Assembly: GCA_051294905.1 (NCBI GenBank)
Contig: CM119386.1
Location: 4,216,001 to 4,280,000, forward strand
Length of the DNA: 64,000 nt
From: Botryllus schlosseri
Lineage: Eukaryota
Direction: 5' to 3'
Positions 23,815-48,377 of this stretch are shown in pieces (position 1 is the stretch's first letter; every line of letters begins with the position of its first letter). The position numbers and the translations under genes were made by a program. Under the pieces are notes generated by a model that did no database searches, was not told where the DNA came from, and saw nothing but the letters and a program-made list of their open reading frames with translations.

Positions 23815-24060
23815 CTATATATACGTCTTGCATATAGTGTATTATGTTCGTGATATTGTGTGGTTTGAGGTCAAGCTAAAAGCAATGACTGTCACATGAA
23901 GTGTCTTAAATATTCACAAATGGAAAAGATGAATATTTCAGGTTCATCCCGCAGGATTAGTCAATAAATAGTGACGTCACGACTCAGGACCCATGGGTTA
24001 TACGAACCTCTGTCCTAATATAACTATTACAACCTACAGTATATTTACTGTATATTTCAG

Positions 24061-24255
24061 AAGTCACCGAAGCTGAGATTAAGCGAACGAAGAGATATAA
24101 TGCCGAAAGAAGAGAAAATGAAGGCCGCTAAAGCCGTATTGGAGGTCACTGGACAGGTGGTTCTGACCACTCTTAATGTGATAGGAGCTGTGGCAGAAGT
24201 TATCGGCCCTGAGGCTACTGAGACTGTTGTGTCTGCTGTCTGTGTTATACAATGA
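24061..24255 (+). CDS. Terminal exon of small CaaX-ending protein, paralogue A (...SAVCVIQ*)
   Basis: Acceptor TATATTTCAG| at 24060; phase-0 frame KSPKLRLSERRDIMPKEEKMKAAKAVLEVTGQVVLTTLNVIGAVAEVIGPEATETVVSAVCVIQ* (internal ATG at 24100); intron end, exon start and 3' UTR are similar to 48085-48510. Confidence 0.65.
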   Translation, partial: KSPKLRLSERRDIMPKEEKMKAAKAVLEVTGQVVLTTLNVIGAVAEVIGPEATETVVSAVCVIQ

Positions 24256-25488
24256 AACTGTTTAACAGGCATCGTCACTGTAAATTTAGGATAAGTCAGA
24301 ATATTCAGTTCATACTAATAATATTTTCATCATTTCAATTCATTATTGCGTTAAAATGAAAAGGTCAGGAAGGAGTCGAAACGAATTCTATATTGGCCTC
24401 TGGAACATGTAAATATTGCTGTACAAAATAGCCCATACATCTGCATATGGGCTACATGTTGCAATTGGAATTAAAGCAATTGAAATTGTGGATTTTCGGG
24501 TAAATTTTGTGTTTCTGCATTAGGCTACATCTGCGGCATATCAAATCAGGTGCCACTTGGTTGCGATAACAGTTAATAAAGTGGATATTAATCGATCGAG
24601 CCACAGTAGTTTGTTGAGTCAGTTGCAGGTGTACTGTGATGTTGTTCAATCTCGAATGATTCGTGACGTCACGCTCTGCTTGGCCACCATTGGCTGCAGC
24701 TGATCACGACGCACTAAGTCATACAAAATGTTTTTGCATCTGCTATGAAATAAGATGTGCAAGCTTTTATGAGTAGACAGATCTCTGCTGGTTTATCCCG
24801 CCGTTGCACAATGAGGGCGGGCGCTGTAGACCTTAGCAATTTCTACCAAGAGTCAGAATTGAGCATGAAGCAATCGAGAATACTAGATTGTGCTGGCCGT
24901 CATTAGGTCAATTTCTAAATTGAATATTGTCTGTAAGCGGGGACATGAAGGTCACCTACCTCACTTGTACAATCCAGTTTTTAATCGGCTCAGATTTGCT
25001 TCCATGCCAATTCCCACATATCTAGGTACGTTGTAGCCTATCTACTCGCATACCACATATGATTCCACGTACCGCAGTTTGGGAACCACAGTCTTGAACT
25101 ATATCATTTGTGAATTCAGTATTCAGTTTGAATCTCTTGATTAAAACGGAAGCCCTGGGTGATCAGCTATTTTAGTGAAGGTAGTATATAAATGAAGAAA
25201 AGCAGCTGACTTGGTCGCAAAATGATAAAAAGAGTGGCCCGTAGGTGACCCCGAGCATTTGCAACGGGGGCCTATCATTTACACAAGCAAACTAACGAAC
25301 ATATGCGGATCATAGTGAGCCATAATGACCATAGAAAACTATGAATGAACATTGAACAGTGTGATGCTAAGGATCATAATGATGCATAAGGTGTGGCTAA
25401 CTCACTACGCGGCACATCCTTTCATTTTAAACAATTCATTTCAGCAATTATTTATTATTAATAATATCAATAAACACACATGTAACAT

Positions 25489-25770
25489 AAGGGTTACCAT
25501 ACGTCCTCCTTGAAAGGGATGTTTCCTACTTTTTCATGAAATCGAAAATGTCCTCCGAGGACGCCTAAATGTCCTTCATTTTGGAAATTCGTCCTCCTTT
25601 GCAGCTTTGACAGCTAGGCTATGGAAAGGAGAAAATCGGTATTTCGGGAGTCTAGTCAAACAACATTTCCAGTAAAAATTTCAAAATCAGCTGTTTTCAA
25701 TTCGGTAATCTAATTTTTATGATTTGAAAAAAGAATACTCCTTTCCCGATTCTAAAATATGGCAACCCTG
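25489..25770. mobile_element. TAGGGTTACC-family hAT MITE
   Basis: Ends AAGGGTTACCAT / ATGGCAACCCTG; TSD TGTAACAT / CGTAACAT. Confidence 0.8.
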
Positions 25771-27372
25771 CGTAACATGTCTATGAAGTATATGCCGGTT
25801 TCCCCACCTTGGAATCGAGCCAGGTTTTGGTTCTAGTCTTGGGTGTCAAACTCAACTGTCGTCGCAGGCCGGATTCAATCATATCATTCATATCGTTCGC
25901 CTGCCAGACCAGCCAAATGATTCCAAAATGTCACCACAAAATCCATGCCCTTTTTCTCTTGAATATTTTATTATCAAACCCACATACACACACATGGTAT
26001 ATTACACTATATTCCAGATCATAAAGGTTCTATTTTAGCAACACCTTGATTCGCAAACAACGGGATTGGAAAAATATGATAATCGGTTGGTATCATTGGT
26101 TGAATACAGTTAAGTCCCGCTAAAATAGTGGCTCTATCGACGATATAAGTTGGCATATACTTTTACGCTCTCAATCTGGAGTTGCCCCGCGTATGTGTTG
26201 TGAGGAATACAAGTGATTTAACCGTAAACGCGGACTGTGGAACACCGCAGTAAGATATTGTAAAGTGGACTATGAACAAGACCTACCCGACATCTGCCGT
26301 CTTGAGGGATTTTGTAATGGAAGTATTTATACTAAAATCTCTCAACTTCTGTTAGAAATGTGCTGGATATTACAAGCATATTTTCATTTTCTCAGATTGA
26401 CCTCGCGGATCGGATGAAATCGTCTGGCGGGCCGTAGGCTATGTTTAACACCCTGGTCATTTCGCGAATGCAGGCATCATATCCTAGTTATGCCTGGGGT
26501 ATGTTAGGCAGACATTGGGCAATCGTAATTTGTAATCGATTGCAGCATTTTCAAGTAATCGGAATCGGTTACATTTGAAAAAATCCGAAGTAGGCCTAAT
26601 CGTAATCGCAATTGATTATTTCACATATTTAATCGATTCCTTATTCAAAGAACGATTTCTTTTACTTGTACATGGACTATGATTTGAACTGAACATTCGT
26701 GAACAAGGAATCGTGCGTTATGATATCAGGTTATTGACAAGGGAAGTTAAATTTTCAAGCTCCACTGCTCATTACACTATACGTAACAGTATTTAGGCTA
26801 GATTAGGCTAGGCTATTTTTCCCCTGAAATAAGAAAAATTACAGTGATATTGGCAGGATTGTTTGAAACTCTGAATTGGAAATTCCCCAGGCGGATTTTT
26901 AGACACTCCGGCCGGAGCTGGATGGATTCAGATTCCGAAATTTGGGTCGACTAGCCGGAGTAGGAGCAGAGTAGGGAATCCGACCATTTCTACGCACCAC
27001 TTTATGGCACTATGATCTAGTTCAGATATCAACGTAATCCAAATGCAGTGACCCGTGCGATCTAGTTGTTCACGCAACTACGAGGGCATAGTGTCCTACA
27101 ATGGTGTGGACACGAGCAAATCTCACGACTCACTGCGATTGGTCTACCTCACACTTTCCATTTGGCCAAAGGCAATTTTACGGTAATTTTTGACCGGCTA
27201 GCCGAGCGTAAAAATTGATATCAATCGAAAGCTATCGCGGTACTGATTGCGAAAATATAATATTTATTCTGCTCGTAGTCCTATAACCCCCATAAAACAG
27301 GCTCGAATGTTGAATTGTAACGGAGCTTGGTATTGTGACCCAGCAATGCCGTGTGCTGGGAGTAGGTCACTG

Positions 27373-28604
27373 CAGTGTTGCCAACTCCGGATGGAAGAAA
27401 ATCGCTAAAACTGGTGTTAAAAATCGCTAGATATCGCTAAATATTGAGAAAAAAGCGCTAAAAAATAGCGCTAAATCTGCATTGATTGCTAAAGGTGTTA
27501 AATTGAACCATAATATCAATACATTCTTCTCAACTATATTTTACTCGTCTGGGTCCTAAGTCACTTATCATATTTCCTGTTTATAATACGTACGAGCCAT
27601 CTCTAAGCGGGACAAAGCGTGCAATGCATTTCTATAAAGCAGATCGCTTTGCGCAATGATCGCTCTGCGTCACCACTGACCAGGTTTGCAAGCATAACCG
27701 CTCACAATATGAGCGTGCCTTGCTCGATGCGTCCGTGAATACGTGATGCGATGTACCGTGGAAATGCGCTTGACATCTCTAAACTGTGTTGGGGTAGGCT
27801 ACTTGAACACGACATGCGACTTGACACACTTGTACACGACATACGAGTTGACCAGACACAACACGACTTGAACCGAGTTTGCCAGCGACTATAAGTGGAG
27901 GCCTTGAAGGAAATATTCCGAGGACCAACCCGGGGTATGAAATTTAATTAAACTGGTCTTAAACGAAAGCTAGTGTCACACTGATTACAACAATACGAAT
28001 TAAATTCTTGTCAAGACAATGGAGCGACCTCAAAACAGCCCCCAAAGTCGGCATTAATCAGAAAATTCGCTGGACGAAATTGGTCATTGTTATGTTCATT
28101 GTGTTGCGATGGTGCCATTGTTGGAGCAATGCCGGTTTTCACACTTTGAGGGCTGTTTCGGGGTGGTTCCATTGTCCTGACGAGATTTTAATTTGTATTT
28201 TCGAAATCACTGCGACACTACCTTTCGATCAAGACCAATTTTATTAAATCTCAGCGCTCAGGTCGCCAGATGTAGCACTGTCAATTATGCTACTTTTAAA
28301 TTACTCAGCAAGAAGAGAGACTGTTTGCCCATGCGTAACCGCCGGGAGTTGCGTATCTATCCGTAGGTTAGTAATCTATAATTTATCATCGTAATCCGCA
28401 CTCTGGTGGCCGGTAAAGTCAATGCCGTCGTCGGCCAGAACTGATTTTTATTAGTTATTTTCGGTAAAAAAGCGCTAAATAATCGCTAAATACTTTTCAA
28501 AAATCGCTAGATTTATCGCTAGGCGCTAGATCCATATTTTTTGGCGCTAAACCGGATGAAAAATCGCTAGATCTAGCGCGAAAATCGCTAAATTGGCAAC
28601 ACTG
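27373..28604. mobile_element. Non-autonomous hAT element with AATCGCTA subterminal arrays
   Basis: Perfect 12-bp TIRs CAGTGTTGCCAA / TTGGCAACACTG; many (A/T)CGCTA repeats at both ends. Confidence 0.85.
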
Positions 28605-28971
28605 AGTAGGTGAGGACTTGCTCCTGAGCTGCACCGTATTACGCCAGCGGGCATTGTTGCGTCACAATATCAAACTTCCATGGGCTATGATATGAGTGTG
28701 TGTCACTGTGTCGTCTGTCTTCATTGTATTGACCACCGAATTCAGGGGAAACAGACCATCTATAGATAACTAACCTACGCAGCACAATGACCAAAACAAT
28801 GGCCCTTGCTTGGTTGCGATTGTTCAGAAAAATGCCAGTTTTCAGACTTTGGGGTGTATTTCGAGGGGTTCCATCGTCCTGGTCAGATTTTAATGTATAT
28901 TTTCGGAATCAGTGCGGCATTAGCTTTCACAAAAGATCAACTACATTTAATTTGAGCCCTCGAGTCGTCAG

Positions 28972-29118
28972 CAATGTTCCCTCCAAGCTGCGCACGTGCG
29001 CAATTGCCCAATACTGACACGGTCTCACCTTTTTTAGTCGTTACGCACTGTTGTCCAAAGGACCGGGCAGTGAGTTGGTGAGTGCGCGCAGGCTCGAGGA
29101 AAAGTAGAGGGAACATTG
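28972..29118. mobile_element. CAATGTTCC-family MITE (147 bp)
   Basis: TIRs CAATGTTCCCTC / GAGGGAACATTG; TSD GTCGTCAG / GGCGTCAG. Confidence 0.85.
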
Positions 29119-29239
29119 GGCGTCAGCTATAGGATTGGCAATTATGTTACTTTCATATTGCTGAGCAGTAATTCGCACTGAGCAAGCAAGCGTGACGACG
29201 AGTGTTGCATATTTATCCGTAGGTTAGCTATCTATAGAC

Positions 29240-30230
29240 CAGTGGTTCCCAACGTTTTTGGCTTCACGGACCCCTTTTTGACCGTCACGGACCCTCGAGG
29301 ACCCCTCAAGATTTAGTTCAAATTTGGCTCAATTATGGTGAGACCGTCATCTGTCTTGTGCAAATATGAACTGCTTGTGATAACAACGACAAAATTACTT
29401 TTCTCACAAATAACATCATGCTATTACGTATAAATTAGGTAGACTTTTGTTATTTCAAATATAATTTTGCAGTTGTATTTCTTGCTGTACGTGGTCTTGA
29501 AAATCCGCATCTTCGATTTGATATGAACGAGCGCCGGAAATCCATTTCCTACAAATATAGATGGAGGCTAATGTCATATTAACGCGTAACGCTTCCGACG
29601 ACACTTCTGGTGTGATCGCATCATTTATGGCACCATAATGAAGAAACATATTTTGAAGGAACATATCACGTCCAGCTTAGTCATATTTATCTATATTTCT
29701 ATATTATCTCATCTTGAAGTTATTCTAGAATACTGTTTATGTCAATCACAGGATAAAATGGATTTCGTGGCAAGGTTTCAATCACTTCATTGGGGAAAAT
29801 TTGGGAAGATACTTCAGAAGTTTTTATTTCAAACGACTGTTCACTAATTTGATGACACTGACCACTTCAAATCGGAAAGGTTTCTCAAACATTACGAAGT
29901 AACCGTGATCGATCTTACTATCTCCATATTTTTATATTTTCCACAAACCCCAACAAAAGTCTCTAAACAGCTATATGTTTGTATCAGTAGGTTATTGGCA
30001 ATTTTATAATTAAAATGAATTTGCACAGTAAGATATTCCATGTCACACGCTCATTCTGCTGATGTGAGTATTGAGTGAGGTTTTAGCTGTTGTGGAGGAA
30101 AACTGCCTGATACTTTCCCTAATTTAAAAAATAAAAAAATAGGTTATGAACCATGTTGCAAATTTAGAGGTCCCGTGCACCCCCTGAAATTGCTTCGTGC
30201 ACCCTGAGGGTCCGCGGATCAGGACCGTTA
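29240..30230 (+). mobile_element. Non-autonomous hAT element (family of 3071-3925)
   Basis: Left TIR CAGTGGTTCCCAAC preceded by CTATAGAC; similar to the reverse complement of 3071-3925; right end degenerate. Confidence 0.72.
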
Positions 30231-30466
30231 CTGCCGCACCCCAAACCCCCAATTAGGGAGAGCGAGCTCGAAAGGGCTCGAAATTATTTTGTGAATTAGC
30301 ATCTGCGATCTGCGATCTGCGAAAAATGCATGGGTCGGATAAACTTTCTGGTGTTGTCGAACTTATGCGTATGGTAGTTAAGCCGCCATCAACTACACTT
30401 TCGCACGCTAATATAACTCAAAAAAATAAATATGCTATTTCATCTGTACCGATTTCTACTGTGCTA

Positions 30467-30629
30467 TCAATTAGCGAGTCCGCGATCTCCCGTGAATAAA
30501 TATTCATATTCATATGAACTCTTATTATAACGAAACATATGATTTCAATCACACCATTTCGAAGACGAATGAATAACAACTATTTGCGGGAGATCGCGTG
30601 ACTCTGTCCAGTCGATTCTCGCTAATTGA
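30467..30629. repeat. Inverted-repeat element with TCAATTAGCGAG arms
   Basis: TCAATTAGCGAG / CTCGCTAATTGA plus inner CGCGATCTCCCG / CGGGAGATCGCG; related arms at 53629 and 56121 share the downstream CACTGATAATACGA..TGAATTGCAA. Confidence 0.6.
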
Positions 30630-31065
30630 AGGCACTGATAATACGAATTGCTGAATTGCAAATGTGCAAACAACTATTAGAGATACGATCGGCATTTCAT
30701 ACAGACGTTTATTAAACGCCGTTATGCATGTAAAGAATTGTTTTACAAGTGAGTGTATTCCCTACCTGGAAACCCTAAATTCCCCACAAGTGCATATGGG
30801 GAATTCTCCACCGGTTCGAAACCACTGCATTAGGAACATATCTTACGATATAAGTTTACATGACTACAATCATTTTGCGACATCGGATCAAATGTTCATT
30901 TCCCCCGCCAATCTCTGGGCCTCACATACTAGCTTCATTAGCCAACATCAGTGTGTCCAATCTTTCATCATAGATAACCAGACAATGAGCGATTTTCAGA
31001 GGTATGCAATCAATTTGACAAATCGAAAGTAGGATAATTATCATGGTTCTGGTAAAACTGTCAAA

Positions 31066-31220
31066 GTATGGAAGTATGGAGAAAACGTTCCATGCCGTAC
31101 TTGGGAAATTTCCATACCATACCATACTTGCATATTTCCATATTCCATACCGAAATTTCGTTCCATACCATTCCATACTTCCATACCATACCATATCATT
31201 CCATACTTCCCTACCATATA
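31066..31220. repeat. CCATAC/GTATGG-rich repeat split by a hAT insertion
   Basis: Degenerate CCATAC(T)T arrays that resume at 32383-32400 after the 31227-32374 element. Confidence 0.7.
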
Positions 31221-31226
31221 CTAGAC

Positions 31227-32374
31227 CAGGGGTGGGCAAACTTTTGAGCTCGCGGGCCGCATTCAACATCTGAATCCATTCGCGGGCCGCACTATATAAA
31301 ATTGGGATTATAAACCAAAACGCAATATTGGTATTTGATTATATAGTGAGGATATGGAGATACTTATTTTAGCAAACCAAGCATTGCTTTGATGATATCG
31401 TACATGCTTCAGGAACAGTGGCGAGATTTCAAAGGCTGGTCGACCTCACTAACCAATTTGTCAAAACTAGAGAGATGAAAGTCGGTTGTCCCGATTCTTA
31501 GACCAGGATTGAAATTTAAATCTGTCAGCAGCGATCTGTTCATAGATTTGCTAATTCCAATTTGGTTCAGTTCCAAGACACACAATGCTGACAGCATCAT
31601 AACCATGTTAGCTTCAAACTCGCTTCTACTGTGCGTGGATGAAATATAGATACCCTAATTCTACGCATACAGAGAACGAATCTACCGAAGACACGCGCGA
31701 ATCGTTTTTTATAAGCACATCACTGAAATAATTAAAACTGGAGAAACTGGAGTGGCCAATCTGAAATCACACTCGTGATGTCAATCTCGTTTAGGATTTC
31801 TGTGATTTTTAGCAGTTGAAACCTTTCAAACTGCGCAGGTTTTAATATCGGGCTGTCGCGCCAGACATTAAACCTAAAAAATAATATAGGAAGTATTTAC
31901 CTCAGAACAGTGGTTCTCAAACTTTGCAAGTCACGCCCCCTTATGATAGTGAACGATTTCGCGTCTCCCCTTATCGCCATATCACAAAACGCAACCAGGA
32001 TGCTAGCAAACCTAACGGGTAGTTTGATGGCACGGAAGGCTACGACTGTGGATGAGAGATTTTTAAATATGAAATTCAGACTAAATACAGAGCATTAATG
32101 GCGAATTTGTTGTCAATCGCGCGGAGAGCGACAAATTTTTTCAGTTGATCTAAGCTTCGCTCTCCTCTTCAGATGCCTTCACGCCCTCGAGGGGGGGCGC
32201 GCCCAAGTTTGAGAACCACGTTCTTAAAATTATCATGGTGAAATATACTAAAAACTTAAATCAAGTTCCTGCATTAATTCGATTCTTAGTACGCATTTTA
32301 TCAATATTTTAATAAGTTTCTTTAGACTCTCGCGGGCCGCATGCGGCCCGCGGGCCGTAGTTTGCCCACCCCTG
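31227..32374 (-). mobile_element. SPIN/GTF2IRD2-like hAT deletion derivative
   Basis: TIRs CAGGGGTGGGCAAACT / AGTTTGCCCACCCCTG; perfect TSD TACTAGAC; minus-strand remnant ISKSMNRSLLTDLNFNPGLRIGTTDFHLSSFDKLVSEV..SRH (about 31410-31560) fits the K-S-x-x-R-S-x-L-T-D...L-R-I-x-T-T C-terminus. Confidence 0.88.
31908..32221. mobile_element. Older hAT MITE nested in 31227-32374
   Basis: CAGTGGTTCTCAAACTT / AAGTTTGAGAACCACG; flanks CCTCAGAA / TCTTAAAA differ only by transitions. Confidence 0.65.
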
Positions 32375-33081
32375 TACTAGACCATACCATACCATACCAT
32401 GTCCTGCATAGTACATAATAACACACTGTCCAATTTCGAGCTCTGATCTATCACAAAAATCGCTCCCAACTATATAGCTCATCTCACACTGCTTTCGTGA
32501 CGAGACAGCAACAGGGAGAGTAAGCTCGTAGTACAGTACTTTCGTTTCTGGCTGTGGTCGTGAGGGCGAAACGTGCTCGCAGTTATCGTAAGTACAAACC
32601 AGAGGCAGCAAAATGATTTCAGCTCGACCCTAAAACCTCTCACAGCTTTCTTTCCTATTTCTAATAGACGGGGTGGGGATAGTCCTCGTCCGACCGTGGG
32701 ATTTTGATATAAAAAATCGACAAAGTATCAAAGCTGTGGTCATACACGTGACTGTAATATAAATTTGAGCGCTATTTTATCATAGGAATAATTGAGGGAG
32801 ACATTCAGACTGAAATGAAACCGAATTGAAACACGTTGCACCGAATGAAAAATGCAGATGGTGTAGCAACGGCCGCGCTGTGAAAATGTGAGTATATAGG
32901 ACCAAGAATCTTTCACTTTCACCACTACTAGAAATATGTGACGTTGATGTGTCAAAACCTTGACGTGGTAACTAAAAGCGCGGACAAAGTGCTGATTACA
33001 TGGAAAAATGACTTGGAAAAGCCGAAGTAATGCTTTTCCACACTTTGCCCCAAACCATATTTTGCAGCTTCGTGTTAGGCA

Positions 33082-33422
33082 TAGGGCTACCATATTTTGC
33101 GATCCGAAAAAGAGGACACTTCTCAAAAATTCTGAAAGCTATGGTTCCGTCTAGGACAACTGGTGAATCTGGAAATTTTTCTACCACTTCTACTGTGTTG
33201 ACTAAAAAAAATAATAAAAAAGGTCATCACTTTGATTCGTCAGGCCGTTACTTGAGTACTGATTTCTTATATCGCAGTCGAATTTTCACATACATTTAAC
33301 CGCAATTTAAAAACAGAGGACAGATTCTCAAAAAAGAGGACATTTGGGTGTCTTTAGAGGACCCTTTCAAAAAAGTCAAGAAAGAGGAAAATCCTATTAA
33401 AAGAGGACGTATGGTAACCCTA
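33082..33422. mobile_element. TAGGGTTACC-family hAT MITE
   Basis: TAGGGCTACCAT / ATGGTAACCCTA; AGAGGAC repeats; no TSD recognised. Confidence 0.75.
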
Positions 33423-33529
33423 GCCGTGAATATGTGATGCAGTTGCAAGAGGTTTTTTTATAAACGGTGTGTATTTCATAATGACCATCATAATGGCTAT
33501 TTTGTCGCTTTAGATTGTCGCATGAGATT

Positions 33530-33652
33530 TTGCTCCGAGTCACGAGGCAATCCACATTTCTGAAGCGCCGAGTCAAGTCAAGGCATTTTTGCAAAGTGAC
33601 TCGAGTCAAGTCAAGTCATACATAAAAGCTGACTCGAGTCATCCCAACACTG
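33530..33652 (+). mobile_element. Right end of GACTCGAGTC-family hAT element
   Basis: GACTCGAGTCAAGTCAAGTC arrays ending GACTCGAGTCATCCCAACACTG, as at 63600-63753. Confidence 0.8.
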
Positions 33653-34069
33653 TTAGTGATATGGTATATTTGTGTCACCCTTATGCTCATGTGCTTGAAA
33701 ACTGAGCACTGAGCAGCGTATTTACGACATTGATGCTGGATATTGCGAAGCAGGCTTCCCAGTGGCCGAAGTGATAAATCTATTTTCTGGTCACACGTCA
33801 CGTTTTTTTTTACTTTTACGGGTTTTCACGGGCCACTTAACGTGACCTGGCATGCCACATTTGACCCGCACATTTCACATTTCTGTTACATAGTACTGTC
33901 AGAAGAGTAGGCTATTATAGCATTCTTAAACTCAGATATTCCAGACGAGTGTTCAGAACAAGTCACCAATTCGGAGTCACCAACACGTTGGGAAATGATA
34001 CGACAGCACATACATGACGGCACGGCGCATATATAGTGCTGCTGGCGCGTGCCGGTATACGGTATTTTG

Positions 34070-35059: not shown

Positions 35060-35096
35060 CTATTTTGTTCTTCTACTACACTACATTATAATAATA

Positions 35097-37830: not shown

Positions 37831-38581
37831 CACAAGGAACCTGTTTAGATATGGTTAATGAAAAACAGGGGCATGAGGTAGCATTTTCGAATCAGTTGAC
37901 TGGTGCGGCCTGCGAGCGATTTGAAGTTTGAATCCGGCCCGAGAAAGCTCATTTTACCTTTCCTAGTTACACCAGTGCACACAACGCTAAACATGCATTG
38001 CTTCATTGAGTTGATTCTCGGTGCGCAAGCGAAACAGATCTGGAGACAAAAACATTTCACTGTCAGATTTCCAATTTTTTAGCTATGGCTTGCACCTGTA
38101 GCAGTGGTTTGAATTAGAACATTATAACGGATAAACTATAACCGCGGTCATTTGCCGAAATAAATTTGGTTCAATTCAATGTTTAGGTTTGGTTATCATT
38201 TCTTTGCATAAAGCACTTCCCGTACAAATAGCAGATCACCATTTAGTGGGCGACTGTCACATGTGGCGACTTCAACATTCATATCCTCGGATTTGCTTGG
38301 TAACTGCATCACCATATTGTCCTATTGTCCTGGCGTGGAAACAGCGAGATCGAACAGGTCACTGCGGCTGGGTTACGTCATACTTTCCATTTGGTCAATA
38401 GCCATTTTCCGGCTAATTTCTGCCGGCTTGCCGGGCGCTCAATTTGATAAAGCGGGTATCAATAGGAAGCTGCCTTGGAGCTCCCCAAAATCAGCCTCGC
38501 ATTTTGCACTGTTACGGAATTTGGCATTGTGACACTACAGGGCTGTCTACTATTGATACGCCGCAGCTCAGGAGCAAGGAG

Positions 38582-40175
38582 TAGGGATGGTGTGAATGTG
38601 TAGCCTACCTCTGAAAGGTTCAGGCTCGTCTGAAAGCAAACCTTTTTGAAATGTTCTGTGTAAACGCGAACGTGAAACTCATGACGTCACGTGATGTCAT
38701 ATTGCTACTTACAAACCCTACACATGAAGTGATACAGTATTGTATAAGTACAACGCGATAGTTATAGCGATGACTCGGTCCACATTATGCCACAAAGCTG
38801 AAGTACATACTGACTTTCTAAACGTCGCCAAATATATAAACTGGAGCAATCAAATGATAAAATAATCCAATAAAATCAATATCTTTCGTCGCTTTGCCAA
38901 CATTGGCGACGAGAACTTGCAAGGGCATATAAGCTTACGCCTTAACGGTCTAGGCCAGGGGTGTCAAACATACGGCCCGCGGGCCGCTTCCGGCCCGCCA
39001 GACGATTTCATCCGGCCCGCGAAGCAATTCCGAGTAAATTGAAAAATGCTTACAATATCCAGCACATGTGTATAAAATGTTCAAGTTTTTTTTTATTTAT
39101 TTTTATAGTAGATACTTCCATTACACAATCCTTGAAGACAGCAAATGTCGAGCTTCTTCAATTTCCATGGCCACATCATAGCCCCCGATTGGGCGACATT
39201 GACAGCCAATTTCGAGTAGGAAAAAAGTGCACACTGAGTTTAGGGTTCTATGGGAAAATGAAAAAAAAGTAGTTCTTCACAGAAGCGAAAACATTCAAAT
39301 TTCTGTGGTTGCACTGCTGTGTCACTTCCGCCTCGACAGGTCCACGGACTCCAGAGAAACCAGAAGCGAGATATATTAATAATAAAAAATGCGTTCCAAC
39401 GTATGTGGCTACAGTTAAATATGTTTTCCTCACAACCCATGCGCCGGGCTAATGCCAGATCACGGCTGAAGCACGGTGAGCATAAGAATATGCCAAGTGC
39501 CAACTTATATCGTCGTAAGCGCCACTGTTTTAGAGGTTCATAAACTGTATTCAACCAGCCAAGCATCGTATTTGCCTTGTCGATTGTTCGCGAATAAAGG
39601 TGTTGCTGATTGATAGAATGAAACCCACTATGATCCGGGGTGCAATGTAGGCCTAATTATACTATTATAATGATCTATGGTGCAATGTATGCCTAATATA
39701 TACTATTATAATTATCTATATAAGCTTAGTAATAAAGTATTCAAGTGAAAAGCAAGGGCATGAGATAGGCTATAATGGAAACATCGACTGATCCGGCCCG
39801 CGAGCGATTTGAAGGTTTGAATCCGGCCCGCGACGCAATTTGAGTTTGACACCCCTGGTCTAGGCCATACCGGAATATGTATACGGCGTCTCAGTATTGT
39901 TACATTGGTATTGAGCAGAGTGTAAAAAGGGTTTCGATACTTGCTATCGATATTATCCAAATAACAAGTTATGCAGGAGTAGCCAAAACCACAATCACAC
40001 GTATTTTTTTTATCGTACAATAAACATATCAAACCACAATAAACCACGTACGCCTGCCAGATTGAATAAGCATCATTCGCTAACTATACCTACATGTAGT
40101 GTATTTCGCTCTTGGTATTGTGAAGTTGCGGGTCAAGCTCACAGCAGAGAGTCACTAAATATTCACAAACGGAAC
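38582..40175 (-). mobile_element. Inverted partial copy of the TAGGGATGG element, split by a hAT insertion and cut off by the LINE
   Basis: Starts TAGGGATGGTGTGAA; reverse complement follows 35059 back to about 34370; match stops at CACAAACGGAA (40175), where LINE sequence begins. Confidence 0.8.
38956..39857 (+). mobile_element. Charlie/Buster-type non-autonomous hAT element
   Basis: TIRs CAGGGGTGTCAAAC / GTTTGACACCCCTG; GGCCCGC repeats; perfect TSD GTCTAGGC. Confidence 0.92.
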
Positions 40176-43100
40176 ACTGCTGATAATGCTGTATATCCAC
40201 AGGGCCTATCGAAAGCTACATTCTTCGAAGCTGCATGGCTACGTAAGCATTCTATTTGACCGCGGTATTTTCTGCAATTCATCAGATAGTGCTCTACGGT
40301 TTCATCAATACCGCATAAGTCGCACAGTCGCGAGTCGATGCATCCAGTTTTGTTGATATGGTACTTCAGTCTGCTATGCGTCGTTATTAACCGCAGAATA
40401 AACGAGTTTCCGAACCTTGTGTCCACTTCAGATACACTGTCATGTACTGAGGGTCGCAGTTCTTTGTATGATCTTCTAGTATCTGTTGATTGATAAATGT
40501 GGTCTCGGCAAGTGGGGTGACATGTTTCGTCGTCTGTGTGTATTAGAGGCTTCCGCCCTTGCTAATTGATCTGCAGATTCATTACCGCGTATTCCGGAGA
40601 GTCCGGGTACCCTTACAAATGATATGGTGATTTCTTCTGCCCGTAGCTGATGATTCAGCTCAATAATTTCATTCACCAGTGCCGTGTGATATAGTCCAGA
40701 ATGTTTGATCGCGTCCAATGCACTCAAGGAATCGCTGAATAATGCAACTCTCTTAACTTGACTCTGCCGCACCCATAGTAGCGCATGTTTGATTGCAATG
40801 AGCTTCACTGAGAAGATCGAGAGAATTCTTAGGAGCGAGTACGCAATATTCATATTATGTGCAGGAACGTGAACCGAATATCCGCAACCTATTTCCGTTT
40901 TAGACCCGTCTGTACAGATTTCTGTGTGTTCTTCATAGTTGATTTATAGGCCTATGCGATCTTTTAAGAGTATTGCAACCGTTTCTGGAGATGTTTGTCT
41001 ACTTATTGAAAGTGATAGTGAGGAATCTACATCGGGAAGTGACGTTGCCCAAGGATCGATAGTATCACGTTCCTGCAATATTCTCACAGGACAAAGCCTT
41101 AGCATGTGTAAAGGCGTGAAACGTTGATAATCAATCTTTAATAAGAGCGTACATGTCCTCCCACGTCTCTTGCAACACCGAATATGTAGGGTTGTCCTGC
41201 TGGGTACAGTCAATTGATATCGATACTGCGAACAGGCGTACCAATGTCTTAGGTGAAGAAGCATTTCATTGCTTTCAACTTCGAATACGCACATCGGGAT
41301 ACTGCACATGGCACCGCAGCATATATTTTCAGTGCTTGGTTCCTAATCACTTAAATTTTCTTAAGGTGTGTCGTGTGTCTTAGGAGCAAAGAAGTAGGCC
41401 TAGGGCTTCATTCCATAATCGATCACCGAGCGAATTAATGATCTATTTAGCATCAACATTACATCTTTAGACCCACCCAATGTGGTGCCTGATAGCATCC
41501 TTCATTACATTTAAGCATTTGTCACACTTCCTTATAACGAAATCAATAGTATTTTTGTAGTTAAACCTCTTATCAAAGTATACTCCAAGATATTTCAAAC
41601 TGTCTACATATGTTAGATCATCTTCACCCAACCGAAGTCTTGGTGCATCCAGTTTCCGTTTTCTGGTAATTAACATAGCGACACTTGACTTCTCTCGACG
41701 CAGCAAATCCCCATTTCGAACACCATCTGACGAATGTGTCCAGGCTAGACTGAATATCAGCAGCGAGCTCATTAATATCGAAACCGGCTTCCCAAATTGC
41801 ACATAATGCACAATCGTCAGCAAAGAGACCCACTTTTGATCCTATATTTGATGGGAGGTCATTTATCATAACAGTGAACAGTATGGTGATAATACGCTTC
41901 CTTGAAGAATGTCGTTTTCTAGATGGTACAAATCTGATAACGCACTTGAAACGTCCGGGTACCTAAAAAGTTCTTTATCCGCGTCAACATTTGTCTGGCT
42001 ATTCCCATACGTTGTATAGTTTTCAAATAAATTCATCCCGCCAAACCATATCATATGCCCGTCTTATATCCAGAAAACCCGCCAAAACCGATCGCCCATT
42101 ATTTTTTTATTGCTTTATAGGCAGAGTCATGGAAACTGATAATATGATCACGAGCACGTCGCCCTCTCCTGAAGCCGCACTATGACTATTTATATTTTTC
42201 CAGGTACCATGTCAATCTGTTAGCGATCATCGTTTCTACTATCTTGCAGAAATGACTTGACCGATATTGGTCGATACGAATGGGGAGAAGTAGAGTCTTT
42301 ACTTGCTTTCAAAATTGGAACGATAATTGAACAGTTCCAGGAACTTGGCATCGCACCTGTTGCCCATGACAGATTTATGATTTCCAGCATTTTTGACCGA
42401 CCCTCGTCCGGCAAGTGCTTAAACACAGCATAACACAATAAGGCATCACCACCCAGTGCCGTATTCTTTTTGGTACATAGGGCTTGCATCAATTCGTTTG
42501 CACAAAACGGTGCGTTAAGCTCGTCAAACACTGCTATATTACATGGAGAAATACCGAGCACAATGTGCCTGTTAATAATGAAATTGAAAGGAAAGTTATT
42601 GTTGCTACTCGCGTTTTTGAACACATGGGCTAACGAGTTTGCTTTACCAACATCATTGGTAATCTTCTCTCCGCCAATCATTAAAGTAGGGATTACTCCC
42701 AACGCTGCATTTGTGTTCGAAACGGATCGTGCGACTTTCCATACCGTTTGAAAGTTTGCTCTAGCTCCCAATGATTTGCAAAAAGACTTCAAAGAATGCC
42801 TCCTGGCTCGGAGAATTACACACCTGCTTTACACACGCAACCTTTTAGAACGAATGATGTCCTCCTGTGCGAACGTCCTTTTCATCTTCATCAATGCTTC
42901 TTCTTCCTCCTAACAGCTCTAGAGCATTCAGCGTTCCACCAAGGGTTGGGATTTCTTCTATGATTGTGCGTCATAAGTATTGAATTGCTCGCAACATGCA
43001 GCATGGTTTGACAGAACTCTGCGACGACTGAATCGATATTGGTTTCAGCTTCCATATTCGTATGCAATACAAGGGATACTCAAAACTCTCCCAGTCAGCT

Positions 43101-43583
43101 TTTCTCAGACTCCAGCTGGGGGGGGGGGGTCTTAATTTAGTTCTTGGGGCTTTATTAATAGAGGTAGTGGGGACGATCAAATAATCACTGCCAAATAAAT
43201 CATTTGACACTGTAGTTGAGCATCTACTTGCTCTATCAGGGGATGCAAACGACATGTCTATCAATAACTCATCTTCTTCAGATGAGTAGGTGAATCCACA
43301 TTCAATGACACAATAGAATATTTATCTAATGCGTCGTAGAGATTGACTCCTCGCGCATTGGTTACATCTGATCCTCACGCCCAGTGATGCGAGTTAAATC
43401 AACAAATACCAAAGATTTCCAGGAAAGCTATGTATAGCATTATATCCATGGGAAGTTGGTGCATATTCCTCGATTACGAGTCTCTTGGAGCAGTATAATA
43501 TCAGGATGATTTCTCATTTCAGCAATATATTGCTTAAATTACGGGAGCTTTCTATATATGCTACGACACTTCCATTGTAGGAT
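40176..43583 (-). mobile_element. Decayed I-group-like non-LTR retrotransposon ORF2 (APE-RT-RNase H-CCHC)
   Basis: APE: ILQWKCRS...PDIILLQET, DFNSHHW, IDMSFAS, GSDY; RT: YRPIS, QGSVLS, MINDLP...LFADDCAL, KYLGVYFD; RNase H: CTDGSK, FSDSLSAL, GIRGNESADQLA; C-terminal CDLCGIDETVEHYLMNC. Many stops and frameshifts. Confidence 0.93.
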
Positions 43584-44361
43584 AAGTAATCTGGTATGAT
43601 TGAAGGTGCCCTGGGATCGCACTCAACATATCTTCCAATGTAGCAGATTCGAAGGATACGCTTAGCCATTTTTCAGACGCTGAGGATATGAGACACCGAA
43701 CATCGATTTCTTCATTTGCACGGCATGCAATAGCTGTTTGGTTGACGATTTCCGTCATACAAGCGAAAAATAGAAACGGGTGTACGGCAGTTAACAATGA
43801 GTTCGCATTGGCTTGATTGTCCTCTTCGTGATGTTGATTACTATCACTGAGAAGACAAGTAGGTATTTTAGGATTACAAGCTCCAACTTCATCGTTTTAA
43901 TATCGCTATATTGGGACTATACTTTGTATTTGAGTATATACATTTTGGCATTTCCTACATGCAGTGCAGTATAAGCAATGACTTTTTATTATCCCTCTAC
44001 ATTCTACATAGCTTGGATTATAAATATTACATATTACATTTTATTTGTGTGCTGTGCATCATTGCAATATGTCTGAAAACGACGTGAACGTCAACGAAAT
44101 AAATTGTCCATCGACAGAAAAAGATTACAAAGAATATTTTCTGCGCAGACTGGTAAGTTTCCCGGTGTTAAAGATGGGTGTGGTATGGTCCTTGGAAACT
44201 GAGAACTTTTTCCAGATGCGACTTCACTTGATATGGTCGCCGGCAACTTTTTATTAACCATTCATTCGTTGAACAATTTTCATCATTTGCATAATATGAG
44301 AATGTTACGATGTGCTGAAACAACAGGAGAGTGTTTTAAGCAGGGGTCGGCAACCCCTTGC

Positions 44362-44758
44362 GAGTGCGGAGCATGAACCGGAGCCGGATTGGATATCCGG
44401 CCGGATTTTTTAAATTTTGGCGGGACCGGATCGGAGCCGGATCAGTACTCTTTCTGATAAGGCCAGAATCTTTATGGATAAGCATGACGTTTGTGACTAA
44501 ATAACTACCAACCAACCACACGCAACGTAACCGCCAAGCCAGTGCAAAAATAAACGAGCCATATTTATAAATTCACGGAACTACCGTACCGTGTTGGGCC
44601 GGACTTCCGGCCTGACTTTTTCATTTTAGGCCGGATCCGGATAGGAGCCGGATCAATAGTTTTTCCTGATACGACCGGAGCCGGATCGGAGCTGGACCGG
44701 AGAATTGAAAAACCGGATCGGAGCCGGACCAGAGAATTTGTTGATCCGCTCCGCACTA
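44362..44758. mobile_element. CCGGAT-repeat MITE nested just inside another hAT left end (44341)
   Basis: Ends GAGTGCGGAGC / GCTCCGCACTA; CCGGATCGGAGCCGG arrays; TSD CCCCTTGC / CCCCTTGT. Confidence 0.8.
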
Positions 44759-45010
44759 CCCCTTGTACGCGGGCCAAAAGTGGAGATAATTTTTCATGGC
44801 ACGCCAAATGATTTGACAAATTTCAGTAATACAGTCAAATTGTTATTCCCATGTAATACATGAAGAGGTCAGATTACAGAAGAGCGGTAGATAAAAAATT
44901 GGCAAGCGTTGCAGAGCAGAGGTAGAGATCATTAAAAATGAAGAATCGAAATTACAGAAAATTATGCTGTGATTTGCGCGCACAAGTCATATGATCAAAT
45001 TATATTGTCA

Positions 45011-45184
45011 CAGTGTTGGGATCAAGTCACTCCTTCGAGTCACGAGTCATCTCGAGTCACAGCATATTTTGACCCGAGTCAAGTTAAGTCACTCGTTTTT
45101 TGGAGGTGACTCGAGTCAAGTCAAGTCAAGTCACGAGTCAAATCACAATTCAAGTCAAATTGAATTTTCGAAGAATGAGTGATG
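45011..45184 (+). mobile_element. Left end of GACTCGAGTC-family hAT element
   Basis: CAGTGTTGGGATCAAGTCACT plus GAGTCAAGTC arrays, as at 62850; interrupted by the MITE at 45185. Confidence 0.8.
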
Positions 45185-45614
45185 TAGGGCAAGTTTTTGT
45201 TGCAATTAAATCCGTGGAAAGTTGCATATATTTTTGAAAAAAGTTGCAGAAGTTGCATTTTGACCACATTTTGCTCGGTTGACTAAAAAAAAGGTCTACT
45301 TTCCAGATTAACTAAAAAAAATTTCCGGCTCAGCTCCCGAAATACCCGTAAAAGCGTTACTTCGGTGCTGATTTACGCTGCTTCAGTCGAATTTGGCCGC
45401 GTATTTCTCTAAAATCGAAAATACTTTCATGAAAAATCGAAAAAGTTGCAAAATGTTGCAAAAAGTTGCATGAAAAAATGGACAAAAGTTGCAAAAAGTT
45501 GCACTATAAGATTCCTTCAAACAGCTTAAAACAGCATTCCAGATATCTTACGAGTATTTAGGAAGCTGCCGGAAGCTGTAAAAAAAGTTGCAAAAGTTGC
45601 AAAACCTTGCCTTA
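45185..45614 (+). mobile_element. TAGGGCAAG-family hAT MITE
   Basis: Colinear with 6317-6713; GTGATG flanks both ends (partial TSD). Confidence 0.88.
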
Positions 45615-45915
45615 GTGATGATTCAAAGTCATTTCATTTTGTTTGCTGCGTGAAAGACAGATTAAGTGTCCATTTGTATTGAATCAAATAACGAATATAA
45701 AGGTAAAGATACATGCAAAATGGCATTGCATCGCTGACGCGCACGTAGAACTGCTAATAAAATATGCATAGCTCCATGCTACTGTCTGTTATTATTAGGC
45801 AAAACTGAATATCGAAGCCTCGAGAAGTTGAAATAAATTGATGTGGTACAATACACAACCCACCTACACATCCGGGAGAATATAAACGCATAAACAATGT
45901 TCGCTCGATTTAAAT

Positions 45916-46760
45916 CAGTGGTACCCAAATTGGCGCCAGCGCCCCTGGGGACGTTCGCGAGCGTGAAGGGGGCGCTGAACATGAAATGGGCGATTGAGGG
46001 GCGCTGCGTATAAAATTGGGGGATGAGAGCAAATGGGGGCGGTGCAGGTATAGAAGGCATCTGTTGTGTAGTGTTGAAACGATTGATGAGATTGATGAGC
46101 CACCATGGCCTCGGACATGACGTTCTAATTGCGAGAAAAGATATCTGTTATACTTGGCGGACATATTCTCCAAAATTTAAGAGTCGAATATATCCGTTCT
46201 CGGTGAAAATGCCACTGTCCGGATTCAATGATGAGCCCTTGATATATTACCGAAAATTAGCGAGACGTGAACTTTTCGAATTGCCAAGCTTGCCTGAGCT
46301 TTATATCGGTTCAGCTCGCATGTCCGAATTTTTAGAAGCCAACAGCAGTCATCGCCACACTTTTAGCGGACAAGACTCTGTATTCACACCCAAAGGGTGG
46401 TACACGAATATATAACCTAACTCAGAATTATATCGAGGTCATAAATCCTACGTGTCTACGTGCATACCTTTCTACGTTCGCACGTGCATGCGTAATTTGG
46501 ATTAAAATGCTGTACTCGATTTATAACGCGGTATAAGTCTGAGGCATGTTCTGGTTCCGTCTCCGTGTGTCATGGGTGTATTTTCACACCCGTATACTCT
46601 TTTCGCTAAGAGGGCATCGTTAGCTGTCTCATTATTAGCGGCAATCAATGCAGAAATACTGTTTTTTATTATTTAGGCGTGGTCAAGGAGGGGGTTGGGG
46701 ACGCTGGTACTTTATTGGTTGTCCAGGGGGCGGTAGCTCAAAAAGGTTAGGGAAACACTG
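45916..46760. mobile_element. Non-autonomous hAT element
   Basis: Ends CAGTGGTACCC / GGGAAACACTG; TSD ATTTAAAT / ATTTAAGT. Confidence 0.72.
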
Positions 46761-47114
46761 ATTTAAGTCGTACAAGATGGTTGGCGAAGGGTGAGCACTG
46801 CGCAATGTAAGCCCTCAGCCGTCTAAGAAACAAAGATACGTTGCTATTAAATTAATCTGTCTACTATGACAACGTAAGCTGTGATCTTTTCGTTTTTTGC
46901 GGTTGCAATTTATTTGTGATGTGAAATAATAGAGGATCAATCAGTGGCACGCTGCAGACGAAAGGTTGCCGATTCCTCAGTCTATATATCAGCAAAGATA
47001 GAGAATGAAACCTCTTAAAGTTGAAACAAATGGAATACACAAATGGAATGCACAATACACAAACCACCTATATATCCATATGATACGACTTATGCTTGTA
47101 CATTTCGATTATAA

Positions 47115-47290
47115 TCGCCCGACTCGCCCGATTATTGGAAATTACATGCCGGTGACGTCATATTTTGTTATACGATTGTTAATATACAATGTTCTTTCTA
47201 ATTCTCTACTAATTGCTGACGATTACCCCTGACGAGTGTCAGCCGAAAATATTCGGACTCATTTCAATATGAATATACCACTCAATTATG
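47115..47290 (+). mobile_element. Penelope-like 3'-end (pLTR) fragment
   Basis: Aligns with the reverse complement of 62383-62500 (CATATTTTG..ACGATTGTT.ATATAC.ATG..AATTCTCTACTA.TTGCTGACG). Confidence 0.75.
47215..47258 (+). ncRNA. Minimal type I hammerhead ribozyme (family 1)
   Basis: GCTGAC-GATT-ACCC-CTGACGA-G-TGTCAGC-C-GAA-AATATT-C-GGAC: intact core, stem I reduced to 2 bp. Confidence 0.7.
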
Positions 47291-47488
47291 CAATTGGTAT
47301 CACGCTGTTGCGTTTCGACAGAACAATATTTCAATACTTTCCGAGGTGAAGGCTCGCTTGTTCTTGTAAAATGATTATAAAATAATTATAGAGTAAATAT
47401 AAAGTAATTATGGAATAATTATTTTACAAGCACAAGAGTGATTTGATTCAGGTTGGGCTGTGGTCACAGAATCAAGCAAATTGTGAAA

Positions 47489-47620
47489 ATGTCTACATTG
47501 AAATGTCTCATTGGGGACAAATTGCGTGAAAGATCCGTCCAGGCATATACGTATTTTCACATTTCACAGAATAAAGATCCTGACTGTGTGGAGCTGCTGT
47601 GCTTGGAGGAAGACAACAAG
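47489..47620 (+). CDS. Candidate upstream coding exon of CaaX paralogue B (MSTLKCLIGD...LLCLEEDNK)
   Basis: Acceptor TTCAG| at 47451, ATG at 47489, phase-0 donor AAG|GTAAAT at 47620/47621, matching the phase-0 acceptor at 48131. Confidence 0.45.
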
Positions 47621-48131
47621 GTAAATAGCCATAGCATGTTGACAAGACCAGAGGGATCGACGATAATCAGATTAGCAGCACACATATAGTAGTGCGTTTT
47701 CCGTGCTGACATGGCAGCGTCCGCGCTGTACTATACCTGAAAGACTATAACCTGCCTACAGCTGAAAGCCGTGATTGACATACCAGAAACGTAGGGCTAC
47801 TAAGGACAAGTTACAATTACCAAGCTTAGCAAGCAATTTATGAAATTTTATGTTTAAATTAGGAATTTTGCATGATATTGAAATGGAACTACCACTCCCA
47901 AGGGTTACTCTCGGCAATGATAACTCACGTTAGTTTCAAGTATGTACACAAGATATGGAGGTCAATCCCGCAGCTTGCTTTGATAAAGAATGAAATTATA
48001 TTTTAGTAATTCAAACAATCTGGCGAACTACGTTTTCGTCATTATTTAAGGACGTTCGCTCATAATTTAAGAACCACTGCCCCAATATAACTATATAGCA
48101 ACCTATACGCTACATACATTGTATATTTCAG

Positions 48132-48377
48132 AAGTCAGCGAAATTGGAATTAAGCGAACGAATAAACATACTAAGAATATGCGTTGAAGAGCATGAGAAA
48201 GACCCGATAAAGAATCGGGCGAAGTTGATCACGCTGGAACGGTATAAATTGGAGGACAAGCAGCGAGGGGCAGAAGAAAGGTGGCGCGAATTGCAAGCGG
48301 GGGTCGCTGTCGCGGGGGCTGCGTCAGGCGCCGTCGGCGCTGGCGTAAATGCTTCAAAATCGTGTGTTTTACTTTGA
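48132..48377 (+). CDS. Terminal exon of small CaaX-ending protein, paralogue B (...NASKSCVLL*)
   Basis: Acceptor TATATTTCAG| at 48131; KSAKLELSERINILR...EERWRELQAGVAVAGAASGAVGAGVNASKSCVLL*; N-terminal part similar to the 24061 exon. Confidence 0.68.
   Translation, partial: KSAKLELSERINILRICVEEHEKDPIKNRAKLITLERYKLEDKQRGAEERWRELQAGVAVAGAASGAVGAGVNASKSCVLL

What the first reader, a model, noticed from the sequence alone, without database searches (positions are those of the whole stretch)
24061..48377. Pair of paralogous terminal exons that both end in CaaX boxes, one farnesyl-type and one geranylgeranyl-type
Both exons follow TATATTTCAG|, start in phase 0 with KSPKLRLSER / KSAKLELSER, and share intron and 3'-UTR blocks (GATAAGTCAGAATA; ATTTTCGGGTAAATTT). 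The middles have diverged beyond alignment, but both end C-V-[IL]-X-stop: CVIQ and CVLL. By established CaaX rules X=Q favours farnesyltransferase and X=L favours GGTase-I. A hydrophobic, small-residue stretch precedes each box (GAVAEVIG; AGVAVAGAASGAVGAGV). Retention of the box despite divergence suggests selection on a family of small membrane-anchored proteins. The 51-aa version from ATG 24100 is missing from the ORF track.
Basis: partly seen in the sequence, partly recalled or inferred. Interest (0 to 1): 0.7.

Follow-up and report, generated by a model that had tools for sequence, protein, structure and literature searches.

The report
Small CaaX-tailed gene and partial duplicate
One of the two exons is the proven last exon of a small, spliced, lineage-restricted gene whose 126-residue product ends in a textbook geranylgeranylation signal (CVLL). 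The other is a duplicate of that last exon alone, and whether it is used at all remains untested.

Summary
Exon A (24061-24255) ends CVIQ-stop and exon B (48132-48377) ends CVLL-stop. Both follow TATATTTCAG and share the quoted blocks.

**Homology.** It lies in three collinear DNA blocks (73-79% identity): the acceptor plus the first 13 codons, the last 5 codons plus the start of the 3'UTR, and the poly(A)-signal region. The coding middles are unrelated on either strand. The two loci are the only copies in the 495-Mb genome.

**Exon B is real.** Contigs from two studies join 44152|47570 and 47620|48132 at GT..AG. This gives a three-exon gene with a 126-codon ORF from ATG 44069.
- A relative's ORF (P0001) is 68% identical, aligns without gaps and keeps the Gly/Ala/Ser tail and CVLL.
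- AlphaFold predicts two helices and a disordered tail, which fits the extended GGTase-I motif.
- No known family matches; G-protein gamma was tested and failed.
- Within-species pN/pS is about 1.

**Exon A is unproven.** B's exons 1 and 2 are single-copy, so only the last exon was duplicated. A's CaaX lies inside a DNA-homologous block, so its retention is weak evidence of selection. A's open, in-frame middle is mildly suggestive (p about 0.02). Its expression could not be tested.

"Family" means two loci.

The parts
44016..44152 (+). Gene B exon 1. The 5'UTR starts at or before 44016. The CDS runs from ATG 44069 to 44152 (28 codons) and ends in phase 0 before GTAAGT.
   Evidence: Contigs of X1 and X5 cover 44016/44035-44151 and join to 47570. 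Sequence read. An in-frame stop lies at 44021-44023. There is no earlier ATG in the covered 5'UTR.
47570..47620 (+). Gene B exon 2: 51 nt, 17 codons, phase 0 at both ends.
   Evidence: Joints 44152|47570 and 47620|48132, both GT..AG, in one contig each of X1 and X5. Single copy in the genome.
48132..48421 (+). Gene B terminal exon. CDS 48132-48374 (81 codons), CaaX codons 48363-48374 (CVLL), stop 48375-48377, 3'UTR covered by contigs to 48417/48421.
   Evidence: The relative's ORF P0001 is 68% identical without gaps and keeps CVLL.
48432..48522 (+). Probable 3' end region of gene B. It holds AATAAA at 48432-48437 and 48471-48476, plus a conserved downstream block that includes ATTTTCGGGTAAATTT (48494-48509).
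   Evidence: Sequence. Block 48453-48522 is 73% identical to 24451-24520. The 16-mer is unique to the two loci. The 3' end itself was not mapped.
24001..24060 (+). Acceptor region of exon A: a CTAAT branch-point-like site, a pyrimidine tract and TATATTTCAG. It is homologous to 48068-48131 in B's intron 2.
   Evidence: about 78% identity with small indels.
24061..24255 (+). Exon A. The open frame is 64 codons plus a stop, with the first ATG at 24100 (51 codons). CaaX codons 24241-24252 (CVIQ). The first 13 and last 5 codons are homologous to B. The middle, 24100-24240, is unrelated.
   Evidence: No other copy in the genome. No homologue in the protein collection. Expression not tested.
24256..24520 (+). 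3' flank of exon A. It holds a homologous block to 24303 (GATAAGTCAGAATA), an inserted dispersed repeat at 24302-24387, ATTAAA at 24470-24475 and a conserved block 24451-24520 with ATTTTCGGGTAAATTT.
   Evidence: (the repeat has 38 or more genomic copies).

Best explanation
The locus holds one real small gene and a partial duplicate of its last exon.

**Gene B (shown).** Gene B (44016-about 48500, + strand) has three exons and is spliced and expressed at a low level. From ATG 44069 it encodes a 126-residue protein with no match to any known family.

**Protein features (inferred).** Exon 3 is predicted to form two helices followed by a disordered Gly/Ala/Ser tail. The tail ends ...NASKS-CVLL.

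**Mechanism (inferred).**
- The tail is a substrate of geranylgeranyltransferase I.
- After prenylation of the cysteine, -VLL is removed and the cysteine is methylated.
- The lipid anchors the helical part on the cytosolic face of a membrane.

**Exon A (shown).** A segment of about 520 nt was duplicated 24 kb upstream. It carries only the last-exon module: acceptor, first 13 codons, CaaX plus stop, UTR blocks and poly(A) signal. B's exons 1 and 2 were not copied. The 47 middle codons were replaced by unrelated sequence that stays open and in frame. Two base changes turned the X codon from Leu-type to Gln (CTT versus CAA), giving a farnesyl-type box.

**Whether A is used.** This is about even. 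A could be spliced to an unknown upstream exon, or translated from ATG 24100 as a 51-aa peptide. Otherwise it is a relic.
For: **B is spliced and expressed**
- Two GT..AG joints appear in contigs of X1 and X5, which come from different studies.
- Thirteen runs from four studies hold parts of the stretch.
- Each B exon is single-copy in the genome, so the joined form is not a genomic retrocopy.

**B is coding**
- The ORF of 126 codons spans three phase-0 exons. Its chance is about 3e-4 at the window's stop frequency of 0.0615.
- It starts at the first ATG of the transcript, after an in-frame stop.
- The X5 contig has four indels in the 53-nt 5'UTR; none is listed within the CDS in X1 or X5 (table 4).
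- P0001 aligns without gaps at 68% identity. Residues 31-81 are 80% identical, with an identical ...AGAASGAV.AGVNAS.SCVLL ending.

**Prenylation motif**
- CVLL was fully modified by human GGTase-I in a yeast reporter (PMC11152559).
- The PrePS rules ask for about 11 small or flexible residues before the cysteine, with Ser or Lys at -1 (PMC1175975). B has S at -1 and K at -2.
- B's tail (residues 60-81) has pLDDT below 50.

**A is a terminal-exon-only duplicate**
- Three collinear homologous blocks, and nothing else shared.
- No analogue of exons 1 and 2 upstream of A.
- The middle is unrelated on both strands.
- The two middles differ by 51 nt, which is 17 codons. P(no stop in 47 codons) is 0.05-0.06.
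Against: - Within-species variants in B give pN/pS of about 0.84 (X5) and 1.4 (X1). Counts are small, so no purifying selection on substitutions is visible.
- Two bulk RNA-seq runs read as raw reads (X19, X20) gave no reads on exon 3.
- X1 and X5 are only guessed to be RNA.
- Lipid modification is not shown.
- The tail before CVLL is moderately hydrophobic (Kyte-Doolittle 1.42) and could act as a weak membrane segment instead.
- For A there is no RNA evidence, no upstream partner and no homologue.
- A's exon start diverges as fast as the adjoining intron.
- A repeat has inserted into A's 3'UTR.
- A's pre-CaaX residues are hydrophobic and predicted helical.
Confidence: 0.65

Rival explanations
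1. Exon A is a dead relic of a partial duplication. Its open frame and CaaX box are left over by chance and recency, and only gene B is functional.
For: - Only the last-exon module is duplicated.
- The exon start and the CaaX block diverge at the same 21-27% as the flanking intron and UTR.
- A dispersed repeat sits in the 3'UTR.
- No homologue among about 15 billion proteins.
- The linker suits prenyltransferases poorly.
Against: - The unrelated 141-nt middle is both stop-free (p about 0.05-0.06) and a multiple of 3, so the homologous CaaX is read in frame. The joint chance is about 0.02. This figure is post hoc, because the exon was flagged for being open.
- The acceptor, the stop and the ATTAAA signal are intact.
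Confidence: 0.45
2. Both products are tail-anchored or otherwise hydrophobically inserted small membrane proteins. The Ala/Gly/Val stretch would be the membrane segment, and the C-terminal CVLL/CVIQ would be incidental and not prenylated.
For: - Hydrophobic windows close to the usual 1.6 threshold lie 9-20 residues from the C-terminus in both copies, despite unrelated sequences.
- B's stretch has small-xxx-small spacing typical of helix packing (by inspection).
- A's stretch is predicted as a confident helix.
Against: - Both windows fall below the threshold.
- B's stretch is predicted disordered.
- Together with S at -1 and K at -2, B's stretch fits the prenylation linker.
- CVLL is invariant in P0001, along with the polar NAS.S linker in front of it.
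Confidence: 0.12
3. Gene B's transcript is a spliced non-coding RNA, or a very young and unconstrained ORF. On this reading the CaaX has no biochemical role.
For: - pN/pS is about 1 within the species.
- Expression is low.
- No Pfam, PDB or Atlas match.
- The gene is absent from the protein collection.
Against: - The 126-codon ORF has a chance of about 3e-4.
- Indels fall in the UTR and none is listed in the CDS.
- The relative's ORF is gapless, ends at the same stop and is 80% identical over the last 51 residues.
Confidence: 0.1

Closest known systems
Paralogue pairs that differ in prenyl type through X=Q versus X=L: PDE6A (CCIQ, farnesyl) / PDE6B (CCIL, geranylgeranyl) and RAP2A (CNIQ) / RAP2B (CVIL) (table in PMC7674641)
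   Same: Two paralogous C-termini whose CaaX boxes differ in the last residue (Q versus L). By the established rule this switches the enzyme and the lipid.
   Different: Those are full-length paralogues of large, known families with proven lipidation. Here only the last exon is paralogous, the body is unrelated, one member is unproven and no lipid has been shown.
CVLL-ending GGTase-I substrates such as CDC42 and RAB8A (RAB8A in PMC7674641; CVLL reporter in PMC11152559)
   Same: An identical CaaX box, with a flexible linker carrying Ser or Lys just upstream.
   Different: There is no GTPase domain and no Pfam match. The product is a 126-aa helical protein of unknown family. CDC42's alternative last exons share upstream exons. 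Here A lies 20 kb upstream of B's first exon, so the two are not alternative ends of one transcript.
Heterotrimeric G-protein gamma subunits (Pfam PF00631)
   Same: They are small helical proteins with a CaaX end, and the family is split between farnesyl and geranylgeranyl members. A C-x-E-x-H-x-K-DP stretch in B recalled the Ggamma core; this was recalled from memory and is only a lead.
   Different: The PF00631 profile finds eight other places in this genome, seven of them above the curated cut-off, but not this locus at E up to 10. No Ggamma chain appeared in the PDB sequence search. B's tail after the helices is about 30 residues longer. B is not a member.

Membership tests
CaaX substrates of FTase / GGTase-I | Cys at position -4 from the C-terminus, followed by two aliphatic residues and a specificity residue X | tested here: met
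   A ends CVIQ-stop and B ends CVLL-stop. The reading frame of B is confirmed by the spliced contigs.
CaaX substrates of FTase / GGTase-I | About 11 small, flexible, preferably hydrophilic linker residues before the Cys, with Ser or Lys at -1 favoured by GGTase-I (PrePS, PMC1175975) | tested here: inconclusive
   B fits: the linker is GAVGAGVNASKS, with pLDDT below 50 over residues 60-81. A fits poorly: the linker is PEATETVVSAV, with V at -1 and a predicted helix. PrePS itself was not available.
CaaX substrates of FTase / GGTase-I | Motif conserved in orthologues | tested here: met
   For B, P0001 keeps ...NASQSCVLL. For A no orthologue was found, so this is untested for A.
CaaX substrates of FTase / GGTase-I | Covalent isoprenoid on the cysteine | not testable with these tools
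   This needs metabolic labelling, mass spectrometry or an in vitro transferase assay.
G-protein gamma (PF00631) | Match to the G-gamma profile | tested here: not met
   A six-frame search of the genome with PF00631 gives eight hits elsewhere and none at C16:4264132-4264374, at E up to 10. Pfam scans of both exon peptides list no G-gamma.
Alternative terminal exons of one gene (CDC42-type) | Both terminal exons lie downstream of shared upstream exons | tested here: not met
   B's transcript starts at about 44016, with an in-frame stop before its ATG. A (24061) lies 20 kb upstream of that.
Tail-anchored membrane proteins | A single hydrophobic transmembrane helix close to the C-terminus | tested here: inconclusive
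   The best 19-residue Kyte-Doolittle windows score 1.55 (A) and 1.42 (B), below the usual 1.6. B's segment is predicted disordered and A's helical.

The most novel reading that the evidence does not exclude
The duplicated unit may be a self-contained "lipid-anchor cassette": splice acceptor, short conserved lead-in, CaaX, stop and poly(A) signal. On this reading it was copied on its own, acquired an unrelated in-frame middle and switched from a geranylgeranyl-type to a farnesyl-type box. That would be a route by which new prenylated micro-proteins arise, or by which other genes capture a membrane anchor. It requires that A is expressed and prenylated.
Probability: 0.15. Interest if true: 0.6.

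Novelty: new member of a known kind. Interest (0 to 1): 0.3.

Why it matters
If confirmed, gene B adds a lineage-restricted small protein to the set of CaaX-prenylated proteins. It is absent from a collection of about 15 billion predicted proteins. Outside GTPases, lamins and Ggamma, that set is poorly charted in non-model animals. The A/B pair would be a compact natural test of how a single X-residue change (L to Q) redirects prenyl type. It would also test whether a last-exon module can seed a new membrane-anchored peptide. As the evidence stands, only B is supported, its function is unknown, and the case is of modest general interest.

Tried and rejected
- **More family members.** Genome-wide DNA, tblastn and pattern searches found only the two loci.
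- **Counterparts of B's exons 1 and 2 near A.** blastn-short and tblastn at E up to 2000 gave only noise. The genome-wide DNA search found them single-copy.
- **Inversion or frameshift to explain A's middle.** There is no similarity to B on either strand or to anything else in the window.
- **G-protein gamma membership.** The PF00631 profile does not hit the locus.
- **Known domains, structures or look-alikes.** Pfam gave only sub-threshold noise. The best PDB sequence hit had E 0.017 to an unrelated isomerase helix. The ESM Atlas gave no usable hit.
- **Known RNA families in the conserved non-coding blocks.** None found.
- **Homologues of A.** None. The exact 51-aa and 77-aa ORFs are not in the collection.
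- **Accession SRR25569784 in the literature.** No paper.
- **Steps not done.**
  - Fold searches were not run, because two-helix models at pLDDT 64-78 would give meaningless matches.
  - The spliced 126-aa protein has no reference, so it was not sent to the Pfam, fold or homology tools. Only exon 1 plus its upstream in-frame stretch (window:47489-47620 translation) and exon 3 were, each separately.
Full report
**1. What is in the sequence**

Both stretches follow TATATTTCAG.
- Read from 24061, the frame is open for 64 codons and ends CVIQ-stop.
- Read from 48132, it is open for 81 codons and ends CVLL-stop.
- The first ten residues are KSPKLRLSER and KSAKLELSER.
- The 51-aa ORF from ATG 24100 appears in the ORF list once the threshold is lowered to 50 aa.

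**2. Extent and nature of the similarity**

A sensitive A-versus-B comparison finds three collinear blocks and nothing else.

| Block | A | B | Identity | E | Content |
|---|---|---|---|---|---|
| 1 | 24001-24099 | 48068-48170 | 79% | 1e-16 | 60 nt of intron plus the first 13 codons |
| 2 | 24241-24303 | 48363-48423 | 76% | 3e-6 | four CaaX codons, stop, and the start of the 3'UTR with GATAAGTCAGAATA |
| 3 | 24451-24520 | 48453-48522 | 73% | 1e-7 | ATTAAA/AATAAA and ATTTTCGGGTAAATTT |

- The 16-mer, the 14-mer and the exon-start pattern each occur only at these two places in the 495-Mb assembly.
- The coding middles (24100-24240 and 48171-48362) show no similarity at DNA or protein level on either strand, with z about 0 against shuffles.
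- Adjoining non-coding DNA is still 73-79% identical. The middles therefore cannot have drifted apart gradually; one was replaced.
- A's 3'UTR also carries a dispersed repeat at 24302-24387, with 38 or more genomic copies.

**3. Copy number**

- DNA and six-frame protein searches of the whole genome return only the two loci.
- B's exons 1 and 2 are single-copy.
- They have no recognisable counterpart in the 14 kb upstream of A that was searched.
- Only the last-exon module is duplicated.

**4. RNA evidence and gene model for B**

- Thirteen runs from four studies hold parts of 47440-48520.
- I laid reads on 43300-48700. Contigs of X1 and X5, from different studies, skip 44153-47569 and 47621-48131, both GT..AG.
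- One 481-nt contig of X5 runs 44016-44152, through exon 2, then 48132-48421.
- The joined form is not in the genome, so these contigs derive from spliced RNA, although the runs are only guessed to be RNA.
- Two bulk RNA-seq runs read as raw reads (6% and 13% sampled) gave no reads on exon 3. Expression is therefore low or restricted.
- The ORF starts at ATG 44069, the first ATG of the covered transcript. It has A at -3 and follows an in-frame stop at 44021-44023.
- The ORF runs 28 + 17 + 81 = 126 codons.
- The 3' end is not mapped. The contigs stop at 48417/48421, and AATAAA lies at 48432 and 48471.

**5. Is B coding?**

For:
- An ORF of 126 codons has a chance of about 3e-4 at the window's stop frequency.
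- The X5 contig has four indels within the 53-nt 5'UTR; none is listed within the CDS (table 4).
- The only hit among 1.84 billion representatives and 5.8 billion clusters is P0001. It is an 87-aa ORF on a 2.5-kb Logan contig and begins with six intron-encoded residues.
- P0001 aligns to exon 3 without a gap and ends at the same residue. Identity is 47% over residues 1-30 and 80% over residues 31-81, and the ending VAGAASGAV.AGVNAS.SCVLL is kept.

Against:
- The variants listed for X5 and X1 give pN/pS of 0.84 and 1.4. Counts are small (9:3 and 5:1) and the amino-acid changes are conservative.

I read B as a young, fast-evolving but translated gene.

**6. What the product looks like**

- There is no Pfam, PDB or Atlas match.
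- AlphaFold, using a two-sequence alignment, predicts helices at residues 7-22 and 25-61 of exon 3 and a disordered tail at residues 60-81. Mean pLDDT is 64.5.
- The tail has S at -1, K at -2 and only small residues back to -11. This is what the refined prenylation motif asks for (PMC1175975).
- CVLL was completely modified by human GGTase-I in a yeast reporter, while an X=Q box was not touched by GGTase-I (PMC11152559).
- Inferred mechanism: geranylgeranylation, followed by -aaX cleavage and methylation, and then membrane anchoring of a helical head of unknown partner.
- The rival is a weak tail-anchor. The hydrophobic windows score 1.42 and 1.55, below the usual threshold.

**7. Status of A**

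In favour of use:
- The acceptor, the stop and the ATTAAA signal are intact.
- The unrelated middle is stop-free (p about 0.05-0.06) and differs from B's by 51 nt. The homologous CaaX is therefore read in frame, with a joint chance of about 0.02. This figure is post hoc.
- ATG 24100 has a purine at -3.

Against:
- There is no partner exon, no homologue and no RNA test.
- The exon start diverges like the intron, at 3 synonymous to 5 non-synonymous changes in 13 codons.
- The CaaX lies inside a block that continues into the UTR, so its retention needs no selection.
- The residues before the Cys are hydrophobic and predicted helical.
- The first 14 residues of A and B are closer to each other (9/14) than either is to P0001 (6-7/14). 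This points to a duplication or conversion after that split, with A's middle as the replacement. This is an inference from a very short stretch.

I put A's use at about even odds.

**8. Comparison with known systems**

- The Q/L contrast has precedents in PDE6A/PDE6B and RAP2A/RAP2B (PMC7674641).
- The two exons are not alternative ends of one gene as in CDC42, because A lies 20 kb upstream of B's first exon.
- G-protein gamma was a lead from memory and failed the profile test.
- No known RNA family lies in the conserved non-coding blocks.

**9. Verdict**

B is a new, apparently unannotated, lineage-restricted CaaX protein candidate. A is a last-exon-only duplicate of unknown status. The "family" has two members. 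Interest is modest. The decisive missing piece is RNA evidence at 24061.

Noticed in passing
window 24302-24387: A dispersed repeat of about 85 nt sits inside the 3' flank of exon A. It has 38 or more copies at 77-82% identity on many contigs of the genome and is absent from the B copy.
   Followed up: partly
window 40476-43264 (- strand): Remains of a retrotransposon lie between the two exons. One ORF has an RNase H domain (PF00075, E 3e-6). Neighbouring minus-strand ORFs look like reverse transcriptase or endonuclease but gave no Pfam hit at E<0.01.
   Followed up: partly
window 44929-45652 and 47101-47281 (inside intron 1 of gene B): These repeats have very high summed k-mer depth in the contig runs, up to about 26,000 in X5, and also show reads in the raw RNA runs. 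Other copies lie at 6312-6721, 53759-54210, 17197-17276, 50786-50962 and 62383-62503.
   Followed up: no
window 23972-23979, 24664-24671 and eight other sites: The palindrome TGACGTCA (a CRE/ATF-type site) occurs 10 times against 1.0 expected. One copy lies about 80 nt upstream of exon A, where B has only CGTCA. Another lies about 150 nt past A's poly(A) block, next to a CCAAT-type ATTGG. These may be promoter elements, but this was not tested.
   Followed up: partly
window 59331-60302 and 62850-63761: Inverted repeats of about 1 kb at 87% identity bracket the stretch 60303-62849. That stretch overlaps the MIB-repeat region flagged by another first-stage note (note s1-274217). This may be a transposon with long terminal inverted repeats.
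   Followed up: no
window 44016-44068: The 5'UTR of gene B is highly polymorphic. One contig carries a 4-nt insertion and three 1-nt deletions within 20 nt, while no indel is listed within the CDS.
   Followed up: partly
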